Translations under genes and position numbers: made by a program
Notes under the pieces: generated by a model
Seen by the model: only the letters and a program-made list of their open reading frames with translations
Told to the model about the DNA's origin: nothing
Databases searched by the model: none
Assembly (NCBI RefSeq): GCF_030028105.1
Contig: NC_092375.1
Span: 54,349,130-54,413,129 of the forward strand
Length of the DNA: 64,000 bases
Origin: Mobula birostris
Lineage: Eukaryota
Direction: 5' to 3'
Shown here: piece after piece, positions 56,941-62,620 of the stretch
Position numbering within the stretch: the stretch's first letter is position 1
Layout of the letters: every line of letters starts with the position of its first letter

Positions 56941-58066
56941 TTGGAGGGTTGCAAATGTTGTTCCCTCGTTCAAGAAAGGGAGTAGAGATAACTCAGGAAA
57001 TTATAGACCAGTGAGTCTGACTTCAGTGGTTGGAGAAGATCCTGAGAGCAGGATTTGAGCATTTGGAGAGACATGATCTGATTAGGGATAGTCAGCATGG
57101 CTTTGTCAAGAGCAGGTCATGCCTTAGGAGCCTGATTGACTTATGAGTCATTCCTGCCTGTGGCCATCAAACTTTACAACTCCACCCTTGGAGGATCAGA
57201 CATCCTGAGCCAATAGGCTGGTCCTGGACTTATTTCATAATTTACTGGCATAATTTACATATTACTATTTAACTGTTATGGATCTATTACTATTTATTAT
57301 TTATGGTGCAACTGTAACGAAAACCAATTTCCCCCGGGATCAATAAAGTATGACTATGACTATTGAATTCTTTGAGGAAGTAACAAAACACATTGATGAA
57401 GGTAGAGCAGTAGATGTAGTCTATATGCATTTCAGTAAGGCATTTGATAAGGTTCCCCATACAAGACTCGTTCAGAAAGTAAGGAGGCATGGGATCCAAG
57501 GAGACTTTGCTTTGTGGATCCAGAACTGGCTTGCCCACAGAAGGCAAAGGGTGGTTGTAGATGGTTTATTCTGTACATGGAGGTCAGTGACCAGTGGTGT
57601 TCTACAGGGATTTGTTCTGGGACCCCTCCTCTTTTTGATTTTTATAAATGACCTGGATGAAGAAGTAGAACGGTGGGTTAGTAACTTTGCTGATGACACA
57701 AAAGTTGGGGGTGTGGTGGATAGTCTGGAGGGTTGTCAGTGGTTACAGTGGGACATAGATAGGATGCAGAACGGGGCTGAGAAGTGGCAGATGGACTTCA
57801 ACCCAGATAAGTGTGAAGTGGTTCATTTTGGTAGGTCAAATTTGAAGATAGAATTTAATATAAATGGTAAAATTCTTGGCAGTGTGGAGGATTTGAGAGA
57901 CCGTGGGGTCGGTGTTGGTAGGACGCTCAAAGCTGCTGCGCAGGTTGACAGTCTTTTTAAGAAGGTGTATGGTGTGTTGGCATTCATCAACCATGGGACT
58001 GAGTTCAAGAGCTGTGAGGTAATGCTACAGCTATATAAGACCTTGGTCAGACCCCACTTGGAGTAC
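56940..58066 (+). mobile_element. CR1 RT fragment, left part (continues at 62072)
   Basis: VDVVYMHFSKAFDKVPH; GVLQGFVLGP; FADDTKVGG; ends [12 protein letters not shown]. Interrupted by a LINE tail at about 57150-57360. Confidence 0.9.
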
Positions 58067-58415
58067 CATTCACAACATGCTGGAGGAACTCAGCAGGTCA
58101 GGCAGCATCCGTGGACGCAAACAGTCTACGTTTTGGGCCGAGACTCTTCGTAAGGACTGAAGAGGGAGGGGCAGGGGCCCTATAAAGAAGGTGGGGGAAG
58201 GGTGGGAAGGAGAAGGTAGGTTCCAGGTGAAAAACCAGTAAGGGGAAAGATAAAGGGGTGGGGGAAGGGAAGCAGGGAGGGGATAGGCAGGAAAGGTGAA
58301 GAAGGAATAGGGGAAAGCACAATGGCTAGTAGAAGCAGGCGAACCATGAGGGAGGGGATAGGCAGCTGGAGGAGGGGGCAGCATGAAACGGATGGGGGAA
58401 GGGAGGGGGAGGAAA

Positions 58416-58733
58416 TTACTGGAAGCTGGAGAATTCAATGTTCATGCCAAGGGGCTGGAGACTACCCAGATGGTATATGAGGTGTTGCTTCTCCAACCTG
58501 AGTTTGGCCTCATCATGGCAATAGAGGAGGCCATGTATGGACATATCTGAATGGGAATGTGAAGCAGAGTTGAAGTGGGTGGCAACCGGGAGATCCTGTC
58601 TGTTTTGGCGGATGGAGCGGAGGTGCTCGATGAAGCGGTCCCCCAATCTGCGTCGTGTTTCACCGATGTAGAGGAGGCCGCACCGGATGCAATAGATGAC
58701 CCCAACAGACTCACAAGTGGAGTGTTGCGTCAC
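58416..58733 (-). CDS. Penelope-like GIY-YIG endonuclease domain (no RT attached)
   Basis: GVIYCIRCGLLYIGETRRRLGDRFIEH..PVATHFN..EKQHLIYHLGSLQPLGMNIEF; element-derived, expression not implied. Confidence 0.8.
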   Translation of the reverse strand: MTQHSTCESVGVIYCIRCGLLYIGETRRRLGDRFIEHLRSIRQNRQDLPVATHFNSASHSHSDMSIHGLLYCHDEAKLRLEKQHLIYHLGSLQPLGMNIEFSSFQ

Positions 58734-59519
58734 CTGGAAGGACTGTTTGGGGCCCTGAATAGTGGTGAGAGAGGAGGTGTAGGGACAGGTGCAGCACTTA
58801 CGCTTGCAGGGATAAATGCCGGGTGGGAGATCCGTGGGGAGGGACGTGTGGACCAGGGAGTCATGGAGGGAGTGATCCCTGCGGAAAGCGGAGAGGGGTA
58901 GAGAGGGAAAGATGTGCTTAGTGGTGGCTTAGCTGTGGAGCGGTATCTGGTTTTGTCGGGTGACTTGTCAACGATAACATTCTCATCGTGCCTCTGGACC
59001 TGTGGAGTAGCATTAGGTTTGGCAGGTGTCTTGTTCAAGTCGATGTTCTCAGTTGCCGGTGTCACGTTGCTGTCAGTGACATGATCATCACTGAGAGGTA
59101 GCTCCGGTGGCTCTAATGAGTCCGTCTTGTTGGATGTGTTGAGGATTGTTTGAGTTTACCAGGGGATCAGCTATTCTGGATCAGGTGTTTTGCAATAAAC
59201 CAGAATTGATTAGAGACTTTAAGGTAAAAAAATCCTTAGGGGAAATTAATCCATGGAATTTGTTGCCATAGGCAGCTATGAAGGCAGTTTTATGTATATT
59301 TAACGCAGACATTGATAGATTCTTGATTGTTAGGGCATGATGAGATATGGGGTGAAGGCAGATTATTGAGGCTGAGAGGAAAACTGATGAAATGGTGCAG
59401 CAGACTCGATGGGAAAATGGCCTAATTCTGCTCCTATATCTAATGGTCTTATCATCTTTGTTACATCCTCAAAGAATTCCATCAGGCTCATAAGGCATGA
59501 CCTTCCCCTCAGAAAATCT

Positions 59520-60065: not shown

Positions 60066-60599
60066 CTGCACACACGCACATGTGTATGGTGGAGTTTAAG
60101 AGGGTCTTAGATGAACACATAGATATGAAGGGAATGAAGGGATATGGATGATACACAGGAGAGCAGACTTTATATAAATTGGCATGAAGGCCAAATGTTC
60201 TATCAAAGTGTGGGACTGTTGTGCGTTCTACATTCAATTGCAATGTATTGTCAAGGCAATATTATACTGCAGGGCAATGAAGTGATAGTGCAGTAGAAGT
60301 CAATGAGGGTTACAGAAACACAACAAAGACTGGTTTTCTATGTGTGAACATTGTTGTGTCTGTGCGACAATAGAGAGAGAGTGAGAGAACAATGCTCATA
60401 CGTAGACACCAGATCACTGCAAATGCACAGACAACAGATTATATATAGCACTAAGGGAAGTCATTGCCCTAACAGAAATAGATCCATATGTTACACGTCC
60501 TCCCCATTTAGATTAATGCAACATAAAACTGTATATGTACAAAACATTCAATTTCCCTTTCATAACCTATATTCCAATTAAAATGTATTCACAATTACA

Positions 60600-61085
60600 G
60601 TCAGAATCAGAATCAGGTTTATTATCACAGCATGTGACGTGAAATTTGTTAACTTAGCAGCAGCAGTTAAATGCAATACATAATCTAGCATAGAAAAAAT
60701 AATAATAAATAATCAAGTAAATCAATTACATATATTGAATAGATTTTAAAAAATGTGCAAAAACAGAAATACTGTATGTTAAAAAAAAGTGAGGTAGTGT
60801 CCAAAGCTTCAATGTCCATCTAGGAATCGGATGGCAGAGGGGAAGAAGCTGATCCTGAATCGCTGAGTGTGTGCCTTCAGGCTTCTGTACCTCCTACCTG
60901 ATGGTAACAGTGAGAAAAGGGCATGCCCTGGGTGCTGGGCGTCCTTGATAATGGACGCTGCCTTTCTGAGACACTGCTCCTTGAAGATGTCCTGGGTACT
61001 TTGTAGGCTAGTACCCAAGATGGAGCTGACTAGATTTACAACCCTCTGCAGGTTCATTCGGTCCTGTGCTGTAGCCCCTCCATAC
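60600..61085 (-). mobile_element. Rex1-like 3' fragment inside the composite
   Basis: WYGGATAQDRMNLQRVV..HPGHALFSLLPSGRRYRSL; CAGAAT-repeat tail near 60600. Confidence 0.8.
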
Positions 61086-62071
61086 CAGAGGCACGATGAG
61101 AATGTTGTCGTTGACAAGTCACCTGTCAAACCAGATACCACTCCACAGCTAAGCCACCACTAAGCACATCTTTCCCTCTCTACGTCTCTGGCTTTTCCGC
61201 AGGGATCGTTCCCTCCGCGACTCCCTGGCCCACACGTCCCTCCCCACGGATCTCCCACCCGGCATTTATCCCTGCAAGCGTAAGTGCTGCACCTGTCCCC
61301 TACACCTCCTCTCTCACCACTATTCAGGGCCCCAAATAGTCCTTCCAGGCGAGGCAACACTTCACTTGTGAGTCTGTTGGGGTCATCTATTGCATCCGGT
61401 GCTCCTGGTGCGGCCTCCTCTACATTGCTGAGACCTGACACAGACTGGGGGACAGCTTCATCGAGCACCTCCGCTCCATCCGCCACAACAGACAGGATCT
61501 CCCGGTTACCGCCCACTATAACTCTGCTTCACATTCCCATTCCGATATGTCCACACATCCCTCCTCTACTGCCATGATGAGGCCATATCAGCTTGGAGGA
61601 GCAACACCTCATATACTGTCTGGGTAGTCTCCAGCCCCTGGGCATGAACATTGAATTCTCCAGCTTCCGGTAATTCCCTCCCACTCCCTTCCCCCATCCC
61701 AGTTTCACTCTGCCACCTCCCCTAGCTGCCTATCACCTCCCTCATGGTTCTGCCTCCTTCTATTACCCATTGTGTTTTCCCCTATTCCTTCTTCACCTTT
61801 CCTGCCTATCCCATCCCTGCTTCCCTTCCCCCACCCCTTGATCTTTCCCCTTACTGGTTTTTCACCTGGAACCTACCAGCCTTCTCCTTCCCATCCTCCC
61901 CCACCTACTTTATAGGGCCTCTGCTCTCTGCCCCCTCCCTCTTCAGTTCTGACGAAGGTTCTCGGCCCAAAACATTGACTGTTCGTTGACACAGATGCTG
62001 CCCGACCTGCTGAGTTCCTCCAGCGGGCTGTGTGTGTTGCTTTGACCCCAGCATCTGCAGAGTATTTTATG

Positions 62072-62620
62072 CCCACTTGGAGTACTGTGTTCAGTTCTGG
62101 TCACCTCACTGTAGGAAGGATGTGGATACTATAGAAAAAGTGCAGAGGAGATTTACAAGGATGTTCCCTGGATTGGAGGGTGTATCTTATGAGAAGATGT
62201 TGAGTGAACTTGGCCTTTTCTCCTTGAGTGACAGAGGATGAGAGGTGACTTGATAGAAGTGTATAAGATGATGAGAGGCATCGATCACGTGGATAGCCAG
62301 AGGTTTTTTCCCCAAGGCTGAAATAGCTAACACGAGGGGGCATAGTTTTAAGGTGCTTGGAAATCGGTACCAAGGGGATGTCAGGGGTGAGTTTTTCACA
62401 CAGAGAGTGGTAGGTGCATGGAATTCACTGCCGGCAATGGTGGTGGAGTCGAATACAATAGGGTCTTTTAAGAATGTCTTAGATAGATACATGGATCTTG
62501 GAAAAATAGAGGGCTATGCGCTAGGGAAATTCTGGGCAGTCTCCAGAGCAGGTGACATGGTTGGCACAACATCGTGGGCCAAAGGGCCTGTAATGTGCTG
62601 TAAATTTCTATGTTCTACGT
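62072..62620 (+). mobile_element. CR1 right part and 3' tail
   Basis: Resumes [51 protein letters not shown] tail. Confidence 0.9.

What the first reader, a model, noticed from the sequence alone, without database searches (positions are those of the whole stretch)
58053..62085. Possible Penelope-bounded composite mobile unit: inverted GIY-YIG arms, 2-kb cargo, one 14-bp TSD
Seen: a plus-strand CR1 stops at ...RPHLEY (CCCACTTGGAGTAC, 58053-58066) and resumes 4 kb later with the same 14 bp (62072-62085). Directly inside each copy lies the 3' terminus of a Penelope-like arm, both tails pointing outward. The arms look roughly 90% similar by eye. Between them is a patchwork of unrelated CR1, Rex1 and unique sequence. 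Known: Penelope elements insert by target-primed reverse transcription and can form inverted terminal structures. Inference: the whole block arrived in one event, with each target nick priming a cDNA, so paired arms may capture and move genomic DNA like a composite transposon. Some of the interior could instead be later insertions.
Basis: partly seen in the sequence, partly recalled or inferred. Interest (0 to 1): 0.85.

Follow-up and report, generated by a model that had tools for sequence, protein, structure and literature searches.

The report
Penelope fold-back insertion carrying extra DNA
A 4-kb block sitting in an old CR1 repeat is one insertion by a Penelope-like retroelement in its usual form (two inverted arms, a 14-bp target duplication, an extra tail at one end) that probably brought about 2 kb of ordinary repeat DNA with it, which has a published precedent.

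Summary
CCCACTTGGAGTAC occurs only at 58053-66 and 62072-85. Removing the block and one copy restores the CR1 frame ([15 protein letters not shown]), and three paralogous CR1 copies align straight across the join. The arms (58067-58997 minus strand, 61085-62071 plus strand) are 5'-truncated Penelope-like element (PLE) 3' parts encoding the GIY-YIG endonuclease. Their tails point outward and they are 92.4% identical.

Inverted arms, a TSD and a 39-bp tail on one arm only are textbook PLE features. A purified vertebrate PLE protein cleaves and extends both target strands from two RT start sites, which explains them. Three further PLE tail insertions in this window have TSDs of 11, 13 and 17 bp, and two of them are fold-backs.

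New here: the inner ~65 bp of both arms is Rex1 antisense sequence, not PLE. On the right it appears to run on into the interior Rex1 fragment (60599-61084). So the template was probably a chimeric PLE::Rex1 RNA, and at least that part of the interior probably came in the same event.

A reusable composite transposon is not shown: there is one locus, no donor and no second copy. PLE capture of host DNA is published for rotifers. Other first-reader notes report fold-back Penelope insertions elsewhere in this genome, but none with cargo. This is a new member of a known kind, of modest interest.

The parts
57350..58052 (+). Left half of the host CR1 (RT domain), up to the target site
   Evidence: ORF 57350-58153. 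Pfam RVT_1 E=1.2e-16. Collinear with paralogous CR1 copies across the join.
58053..58066 (.). Left copy of the 14-bp target-site duplication, CCCACTTGGAGTAC
   Evidence: Only two matches in the window. It lies in the CR1 codons for (P)HLEY.
58067..58932 (-). Left arm, PLE part: 5'-truncated 3' part of a Penelope-like element with the short type of 3' end. The GIY-YIG open frame at 58928-58419 is intact (170 aa) apart from a 9-nt in-frame deletion relative to the right arm.
   Evidence: Exhaustive protein search: 4560 hits; P0001 84% and P0002 82% identical; full-length PLEs such as P0009 (816 aa, RVT_1 plus GIY-YIG). Pfam GIY-YIG E=0.0047, below the cut-off. The 3' end aligns with the short ends of other copies.
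58933..58997 (+). Left copy of the leader (U1L): Rex1-derived sequence, Rex1 sense on the plus strand, joined head to head to the truncated PLE
   Evidence: 93% identical to the right leader. No PLE protein homology upstream of TTKHIF. See the right leader for the Rex1 evidence.
58998..58999 (.). Two bases (AC) between the left arm and the interior
   Evidence: Read from the sequence.
59000..59129 (+). U2 plus Rex1': a diverged second copy of the leader (59000-59057, 46/61 identical) followed by sequence collinear with Rex1 proper. It starts at the same Rex1 position as the leader, for no reason I could establish.
   Evidence: U2 against the leader: score 55 against 16.5 +/- 3.2, reached by 0 of 500 shuffles. 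The collinear continuation: global score 17 against -12 +/- 7.3, reached by 0 of 2000 shuffles and 2 of 1874 random window segments.
59147..59450 (+). LINE endonuclease-domain fragment (FTRGSAILDQVFCNKPELIRDFKVK) directly followed by a stop-rich CR1 C-terminal/3' end fragment
   Evidence: 78% identical to 36407-36500 and 70% to 43123-42904. Translations.
59435..60065 (-). A short CR1 RT piece (59435-59482), then a 5'-truncated CR1 3' part (about 59523-60065) that begins at ...CVQFWSP
   Evidence: tblastn with host CR1 pieces. ORF 59617-59829. 92% identical to 43475-43619.
60085..60215 (+). Short CR1 3' end, head to head with the previous piece
   Evidence: tblastn FKRVLDEHIDMKGMKGYG; sequence.
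60216..60598 (.). About 380 bp with no match in the window and no recognisable coding
   Evidence: No blastn hit; only a chance-looking ORF.
60599..61084 (-). Rex1-like LINE 3' part, with its natural 3' end ((TCAGAA)n at 60601-16) and an open C-terminal frame
   Evidence: ORF 60809-61141. Six Rex1-type homologues at 47-54% identity. 77% identical to the copy at 51 kb. Tandem repeat.
61085..61148 (-). Right copy of the leader (U1R): the Rex1 reading frame continues through it, so the right arm is continuous with the interior Rex1 fragment
   Evidence: The Rex1 ORF runs to 61141. The invariant W lies at 61085-87, inside the arm. Rex1 proteins align 18-60 nt into the arm. A second copy, U2 plus Rex1', shows the same contiguity.
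61149..62032 (+). Right arm, PLE part. The GIY-YIG frame is broken by frameshifts and a stop.
   Evidence: tblastn hits in three frames; arm alignment; translations.
62033..62071 (+). 39-bp tail extension present on the right arm only (the long type of 3' end)
   Evidence: Arm homology stops at 62032. The same extension is present in two other copies in the window, 11.8 kb R and 11.3 kb L. It corresponds to the optional 30-40 bp PLE tail (PMC8557442, PMC11167929).
62072..62085 (.). Right copy of the 14-bp target-site duplication
62086..62640 (+). Right half of the host CR1 (CVQFWSP... to the 3' end)

Best explanation
One PLE-mediated retrotransposition event into a CR1. The PLE endonuclease made a staggered break 14 bp apart, and both target 3' ends primed reverse transcription on PLE 3' ends. 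One start used the inner RT start site (short end, left arm) and the other used the outer site (long end with 39 extra bases, right arm). The template was not a plain PLE. It was a chimeric RNA in which the last ~915 nt of a PLE (endonuclease coding part plus 3' UTR, no RT) is preceded by antisense Rex1 sequence. That is most simply a read-through transcript of a donor locus where a 5'-truncated PLE lies against a Rex1 fragment, mobilised in trans. The right-hand cDNA ran on through Rex1 and probably through the rest of the 2.1-kb interior, which would be 5' transduction of donor flank. The left-hand cDNA stopped 65 nt into Rex1 and was joined with 2 filler bases. Shown: the TSD, the restored CR1, the arm anatomy, the two kinds of end, and the shared non-PLE leader. 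Supported but not proven: the leader is Rex1 sequence continuous with the interior Rex1 fragment. Inferred: the chimeric donor transcript, trans mobilisation, and co-arrival of the part of the interior to the left of 60599.
For: TSD and seamless CR1. Arms end at genuine PLE 3' termini of the two types also seen in other copies here. Three other PLE tail insertions in the window have TSDs of 11, 13 and 17 bp, and two are fold-backs with one long and one short end. PLE homology stops at TTKHIF in both arms, and both arms share the next ~65 bp at 93%. The Rex1 frame and Rex1 protein alignments cross the 61085 boundary, and a second, diverged copy has leader and Rex1 proper contiguous (p about 1e-3). 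No interior LINE piece has a TSD. Interior CR1 pieces have CpG o/e of 0.18-0.20, as depleted as the older host CR1 (0.23-0.38) and below the arms (0.41-0.47). No nested-insertion parse works: the leftmost and rightmost interior pieces are not parts of one element. Literature: an inverted 5'-truncated copy plus a one-sided 30-40 bp tail (PMC8557442); both strands cleaved and extended, with two internal RT start sites that define the tail (PMC11167929); host DNA captured between PLE repeats with TSDs (PMC3846280).
Against: No donor locus or second copy could be searched, because no tool holds this genome. At the DNA level the leader is not significantly similar to the other Rex1 copy at 51 kb, so its Rex1 identity rests on protein-level alignments and on the collinear U2 copy. 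The tandem arrangement of leader, AC, then a 75% copy of the leader starting at the same Rex1 position is not predicted by this model. The interior TE pieces cannot be dated without genome-wide consensus sequences. If the left arm was instead copied from the right-hand cDNA by snap-back, the shared junction need not predate this event.
Confidence: 0.55

Rival explanations
1. The original insertion was a plain fold-back with abutting arms or a short spacer, like the one at 11.7 kb. The 2.1-kb interior arrived later, by insertions or by break repair with captured filler DNA at the unstable centre of the palindrome.
For: Both arms end at the same inner base (58997 and 61085), as expected for a symmetric fold-back. 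The other fold-back in the window has only a 36-nt spacer. Long palindromes are known to break at the centre (general knowledge). DNA similarity of the leader to the Rex1 copy at 51 kb is not significant, so the Rex1 fragment could merely abut the arm.
Against: The Rex1 frame and protein alignments run through the boundary, and the invariant W codon lies inside the arm. A second copy shows leader and Rex1 proper contiguous. No TSD surrounds the Rex1 piece or any other interior piece. The interior CR1 pieces look at least as old as the host CR1 by CpG depletion.
Confidence: 0.25
2. One reading: the block is a copy of a non-autonomous, PLE-mobilised cassette (interior plus right arm) that exists in several copies and regenerates its inverted left arm at each insertion.
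For: Precedent in rotifers, where an NRPS gene and non-coding DNA lie between PLE repeats with a TSD and a verified empty site (PMC3846280). Non-autonomous PLE derivatives are known (PMC8557442). U2, a diverged leader copy at the left end of the interior, could be a relic of an earlier generation.
Against: There is a single locus. No part of the interior other than common repeats recurs in the window. There are no PLE remnants inside the interior. No other note in this genome reports cargo. The cargo is decayed repeats with nothing that would favour its spread.
Confidence: 0.1
3. It is not one insertion: either two independent PLE insertions or a mis-assembly (a technical palindrome or a false join).
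For: PLE tandem and inverted structures are known to trouble assemblies (PMC8557442).
Against: Independent insertions would each have their own TSD and would leave host CR1 sequence between them. Instead the CR1 is restored exactly across the whole block with one 14-mer. The arms differ by 70 substitutions and 15 indels, unlike a read-level palindrome artefact.
Confidence: 0.03

Closest known systems
[quoted passage not shown] 2021, PMC8557442; Frangieh et al. 2024, PMC11167929)
   Same: A C-terminal GIY-YIG endonuclease, strong 5' truncation, an inverted 5'-truncated copy forming terminal inverted repeats, a variable short TSD, and an optional 30-40 bp tail at one end only. The tail is explained by two RT start sites and by extension of both target strands.
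   Different: There is no full-length copy and no direct pseudo-LTR. The arms carry 65 bp of Rex1 at their inner ends. About 2.1 kb of non-PLE DNA lies between the arms instead of a PLE body or a short spacer. Rfam does not call a hammerhead.
PLE-mediated capture and mobilisation of host DNA in Adineta vaga (Arkhipova et al. 2013, PMC3846280)
   Same: Unrelated DNA lies between PLE terminal repeats and the whole unit is flanked by one TSD. The inferred mobilisation is in trans, through the PLE 3' sequences.
   Different: In the rotifer the cargo lies between two direct pLTRs with an extra inverted one, includes an intact intron-containing gene, and has a verified allelic empty site. Here there are only two inverted arms, the cargo is decayed repeats, and the empty site is inferred from paralogues.
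L1 5' transduction and twin priming (Ostertag and Kazazian 2001; from my own knowledge)
   Same: A read-through transcript that starts upstream of a retroelement copy carries flanking DNA to a new site. Use of the second target 3' end as a primer produces an inverted segment.
   Different: In L1 twin priming the second primer anneals inside the same RNA, so the inverted part lacks the 3' end. Here both arms end at the element's 3' terminus, so each nick started at the RNA 3' region, as seen for PLE protein in vitro.
Bacterial composite transposon (IS-cargo-IS)
   Same: Inverted terminal copies of a mobile element bracket unrelated DNA, with one TSD.
   Different: The arms are not autonomous (no RT, one broken endonuclease frame). 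Movement is through RNA and TPRT, not cut-and-paste by enzymes bound to both ends. Nothing shows that the pair of arms is needed or reused.

Membership tests
Penelope-like element (EN+ PLE) | GIY-YIG endonuclease at the C-terminus of an RT-EN ORF | tested here: met
   The left arm's 170-aa frame hits 4560 proteins (49 at E<=1e-30), including full-length 800-900 aa PLE ORFs. P0009 carries RVT_1 plus GIY-YIG. Pfam GIY-YIG on the arm itself is below the cut-off (17.6 against 22.6 bits). The RT part is absent from both arms because of 5' truncation.
Penelope-like element (EN+ PLE) | Short target-site duplication of variable length | tested here: met
   An exact 14-bp TSD. Other PLE tail insertions in the window have 11, 13 and 17 bp.
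Penelope-like element (EN+ PLE) | An inverted 5'-truncated copy giving terminal inverted repeats | tested here: met
   Arms 58067-58997 and 61085-62071, 92.4% identical, tails outward.
Penelope-like element (EN+ PLE) | [quoted passage not shown] | tested here: met
   39 bp (62033-62071) on the right arm only. The same long and short ends occur in other copies.
Penelope-like element (EN+ PLE) | A hammerhead ribozyme motif in the terminal repeat | tested here: inconclusive
   Rfam gives no hammerhead at E<=1 in the block or at E<=10 in two other copies. The family consensus reads ...CTGA(C/T)GAAGGGTCTCGGCCCnAAAnGTnGAC..., a hammerhead-like core by eye. Both arms have CCCAAAAC where two other copies in the window have G (GAAA), and the left arm has CTTACGA.
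Penelope-like element (EN+ PLE) | A direct partial tandem (pseudo-LTR) | tested here: not met
   No direct repeat of the arm in the block or its flanks. This feature is typical of full-length copies and is not required of truncated ones.
PLE-captured host DNA (as in Adineta vaga) | Non-PLE DNA between PLE terminal repeats, with the whole unit flanked by one TSD | tested here: met
   2087 bp (58998-61084) with no PLE homology, flanked by the 14-bp TSD.
PLE-captured host DNA (as in Adineta vaga) | An empty site and a donor locus, showing that the unit moved as a whole | not testable with these tools
   Only paralogous CR1 copies serve as an empty-site proxy. The genome is not searchable here.
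Composite transposon | Two functional mobile elements whose ends act together to move the intervening DNA repeatedly | tested here: not met
   Both arms lack the RT, and the right arm's endonuclease frame is broken. There is no second copy in the window.
Rex1-type LINE (for the leader) | The leader is part of the Rex1 coding sequence, continuous with 60599-61084 | tested here: inconclusive
   For: ORF continuity, with the invariant W inside the arm; tblastn extends 18-60 nt into the arm; a second copy has leader and Rex1 proper contiguous. Against: DNA similarity to the copy at 51 kb is not significant upstream of the W codon.

The most novel reading that the evidence does not exclude
The block is one copy of a self-renewing, PLE-dependent cassette. 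A transcript running from the left end of the interior to the right arm's tail is reverse transcribed from one nick. A second, shorter cDNA from the other nick rebuilds the inverted left arm each time. About 2 kb of genomic DNA would then travel through a vertebrate genome as a non-autonomous fold-back element, and the diverged leader copy U2 would be a relic of an earlier generation.
Probability: 0.1. Interest if true: 0.6.

Novelty: new member of a known kind. Interest (0 to 1): 0.3.

Why it matters
The block is a clean natural example of what purified PLE protein does in vitro. Both target strands are primed and both RT start sites are used in one event. The intact TSD and the restorable host sequence let the junctions be read base by base. 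The shared PLE::Rex1 junction suggests that an RT-less PLE 3' fragment with foreign 5' sequence can be mobilised in trans in a cartilaginous fish. If a donor is found, that extends PLE-mediated DNA capture from bdelloid rotifers to vertebrates. For annotation, such blocks would otherwise be masked as six or seven unrelated repeat fragments. As a single decayed locus it does not change what is known about PLE biology.

Tried and rejected
(1) A hammerhead call by Rfam found nothing in the block or in two other PLE tails.

(2) I looked for other copies of this subfamily outside the window. The closest protein, P0001 (84%), comes from GCA_030144855.1, but no DNA was served. The 5.8-billion-protein search gave nothing above 62% identity. 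A metagenome scan with an 18-mer spanning the PLE/leader junction gave 10 loci with no similarity beyond the 18-mer, so these are chance hits.

(3) I tested whether the leader is a 5' tandem monomer array. There is no third unit, and Tandem Repeats Finder reports nothing there.

(4) I tested whether the leader or U2 is homologous to the host CR1 target, which would mean homology-guided or site-specific targeting. The alignments are not significant, and BLASTP of a Rex1 protein against the host CR1 shows nothing. Only the 7-mer TGGAGTA is shared by the host TSD and the start of U2, and I noticed that after the fact.

(5) I tested snap-back priming of the right-hand cDNA through pairing of U2 with the leader. 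It predicts a left arm joined directly to U2 with no second leader, which is not what is seen.

(6) I tested microhomology joining at TGGAG. The predicted junction, CCTCTGGTATGGAGTAGC, differs from the observed CCTCTGGACCTGTGGAGTAGC.

(7) I tried peeling the interior as nested TPRT insertions. No TSDs were found and no consistent parse exists.

(8) I searched for old PLE remnants inside the interior and found none.

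
Full report
**The observation**

The 14-mer CCCACTTGGAGTAC occurs at 58053-58066 and 62072-62085 and nowhere else in the 64-kb window, even with one mismatch allowed (0.06 expected by chance). The neighbouring bases differ on both sides, so the repeat is exactly 14 bp.

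Deleting 58067-62085 restores an uninterrupted CR1 frame...[38 protein letters not shown]... A paralogous CR1 at 39029 has the same motif unbroken. Three paralogous CR1 copies align collinearly across the reconstructed join. The left half carries an RVT_1 domain. The two CR1 halves are therefore one element, and the 4019-bp block (58067-62085, counting one copy of the 14-mer) is an insertion with a 14-bp target-site duplication (TSD).

**The arms**

- 58071-58997 and 61085-62032 are inverted repeats, 89% identical with gaps counted.
- Without gaps they are 92.4% identical: 70 substitutions, 15 of them at CpG sites, plus 15 indels. My calculation from those counts gives K2P of about 0.08.
- The left arm keeps an open 170-aa frame (58928-58419, minus strand). 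An exhaustive search finds 4560 relatives. The best are 84% and 82% identical, and full-length 800-900 aa proteins match it with their C-terminus.
- One of these full-length proteins, P0009, carries RVT_1 followed by GIY-YIG. This is the domain architecture of a Penelope-like element (PLE).
- The right arm encodes the same protein in three shifted frames with a stop.
- Both arms are sense-outward, so each 3' end abuts a copy of the TSD.

**The arm ends are ordinary for this family**

Aligning all PLE tails in the window shows two kinds of 3' end. The short end stops in ...CCTCCAGCATTTTGTGTGTGTTG. The long end has about 35-40 more bases.

- The left arm has the short end and the right arm has the long end (62033-62071, 39 bp).
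- The fold-back at 11708-11990 has the same asymmetry and a 13-bp TSD (11 of 13 identical).
- A 104-bp fold-back at 11314-11417 has an 11-bp TSD.
- A solo tail at 46444-46548 has an exact 17-bp TSD.

Unchecked first-reader notes from other windows of this genome also list fold-back Penelope insertions with TSDs of 10-15 bp.

**What is already published**

- Craig et al. 2021 (PMC8557442) describe the inverted 5'-truncated copy that forms inverted repeats flanking the unit, and a 30-40 bp tail often present at only one end.
- Frangieh et al. 2024 (PMC11167929) purified a lizard PLE protein. [quoted passage not shown]

**New detail: the arms are chimeric**

PLE protein homology begins at TTKHIF (58925 and 61156) in both arms. 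Nothing upstream matches, although the closest relative P0002 has 212 more residues there. The arms still share the next ~65 bp at 93%. Another first-reader note (s1-146165) had called this a non-Penelope leader.

On the right side a 110-aa Rex1-type frame (60809-61141, minus strand) runs through the arm boundary at 61085.

- Its invariant tryptophan codon lies at 61085-87, inside the arm.
- Rex1 proteins align 18-60 nt into the arm.
- Directly after the left leader, separated by two bases, lies a 75% copy of the leader (59000-59057; reached by 0 of 500 shuffles).
- That copy is followed by sequence collinear with the Rex1 sequence that follows the right leader (global score 17 against -12 +/- 7.3; reached by 0 of 2000 shuffles and 2 of 1874 random window segments).

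Two separate copies therefore show leader and Rex1 proper side by side, so the leader is most likely Rex1 sequence. The caveat is that DNA similarity of the leader to the Rex1 copy at 51 kb is not significant.

If the leader is Rex1, the right arm is continuous with the interior Rex1 fragment (60599-61084). That fragment cannot then be a later insertion. It also follows that both arms were copied from a template in which a truncated PLE was already joined head to head to Rex1.

**The rest of the interior**

| Coordinates | Strand | Content |
|---|---|---|
| 59147-59262 | plus | LINE endonuclease-domain piece |
| to 59450 | plus | stop-rich CR1 tail |
| 59435-59482 | minus | CR1 RT piece |
| about 59523-60065 | minus | CR1 3' part |
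| 60085-60215 | plus | CR1 tail |
| 60216-60598 | unknown | ~380 bp with no match |

- None of these pieces has a TSD.
- There is no PLE remnant among them.
- The leftmost and rightmost pieces do not belong to one element, so a nested-insertion history does not parse.
- CpG o/e is 0.18-0.20 in the interior CR1 pieces, 0.23-0.38 in the host CR1 (which predates the event) and 0.41-0.47 in the arms. This is weak evidence that the interior is old genomic DNA rather than fresh insertions.

**Verdict on mechanism**

The best reading (confidence 0.55) is one PLE-mediated event with priming from both nicks. The template was a chimeric, RT-less transcript ending in a PLE 3' part, mobilised in trans. 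The right-hand cDNA carried Rex1, and probably the whole interior, as transduced donor flank.

| Rival | Confidence |
|---|---|
| Symmetric fold-back whose centre was filled later | 0.25 |
| Multi-copy cassette that rebuilds its left arm at each insertion | 0.10 |
| Assembly artefact or two independent insertions | 0.03 |

The last rival is contradicted by the arm divergence and by the exact restoration of the CR1.

One feature is unexplained by any model I tried. The diverged leader copy starts at the same Rex1 position as the PLE/Rex1 junction and sits in tandem with the left leader.

**Comparison and novelty**

Capture of unrelated DNA between PLE repeats with a TSD, and the conclusion that the terminal repeats suffice in cis for mobilisation in trans, were published for Adineta vaga (PMC3846280). 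The composite-transposon analogy fails on its defining feature, because the arms are not autonomous and nothing shows reuse.

I class this as a new member of a known kind. It is interesting mainly as a well-preserved natural record of PLE double priming, and as a candidate first vertebrate case of PLE-mediated transduction. It needs a genome-wide donor search that these tools cannot run.

Noticed in passing
window 11708-11990: A fold-back mini-Penelope with 97-nt arms (11711-11807 and 11844-11940) and a 36-nt spacer. Only the right arm has the long tail. The TSD is ACCCATAACTAAT / ACTCGTAACTAAT (11 of 13 identical).
   Followed up: partly
window 11303-11428: A 104-bp fold-back made only of the PLE tail, with its long end on the left, flanked by TACACACCCTA / TATACACCCTA. 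Rfam scores it weakly as a miRNA-like hairpin (mir-338, E=0.0016, below the gathering score), which is probably just the fold-back.
   Followed up: partly
window 46427-46565: A solo 105-bp PLE tail (short end) with an exact 17-bp TSD, TCTGAAAGAACTTCACA.
   Followed up: partly
window 58998-59129: A diverged (75%) second copy of the arm leader, with Rex1-like continuation, in direct tandem with the left arm's leader and starting at the same Rex1 position as the PLE/Rex1 junction. No model I tried explains it.
   Followed up: yes
window 59523-60215: Two CR1 3' ends lie head to head with their tails outward, the same layout as the PLE arms. The minus-strand piece begins at ...CVQFWSP, within about 5 nt of the position where the host CR1 is interrupted. 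This may be chance or a break-prone site in CR1. No TSD was found.
   Followed up: partly
window 58059-58065 and 59003-59009: The 7-mer TGGAGTA is shared by the host TSD and the start of U2, and the leaders have TGGAGTG / TGGAGCG. Longer alignments are not significant, and I noticed this after the fact.
   Followed up: yes
window 2161-2551 and 42028-42234: Older PLE fragments: a 5'-truncated copy on the minus strand at 2.2 kb (70-77% identical to the arms) and a GIY-YIG coding fragment at 42 kb (about 72% DNA identity, 50-62% protein identity).
   Followed up: no
window 54730-55467 (minus strand): An intact 245-aa ORF that looks by eye like the N-terminal endonuclease part of a LINE, just upstream of the host CR1 region. 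No search was run on it.
   Followed up: no
window 58120-58160 and 61945-61985: Both arms carry CCCAAAAC where two other copies in the window have G (CCCGAAAT at 46.4 kb, CCTGAAAA at 2.2 kb) in the hammerhead-like core. This is either a shared inactivating change in the source copy or parallel CpG decay.
   Followed up: partly
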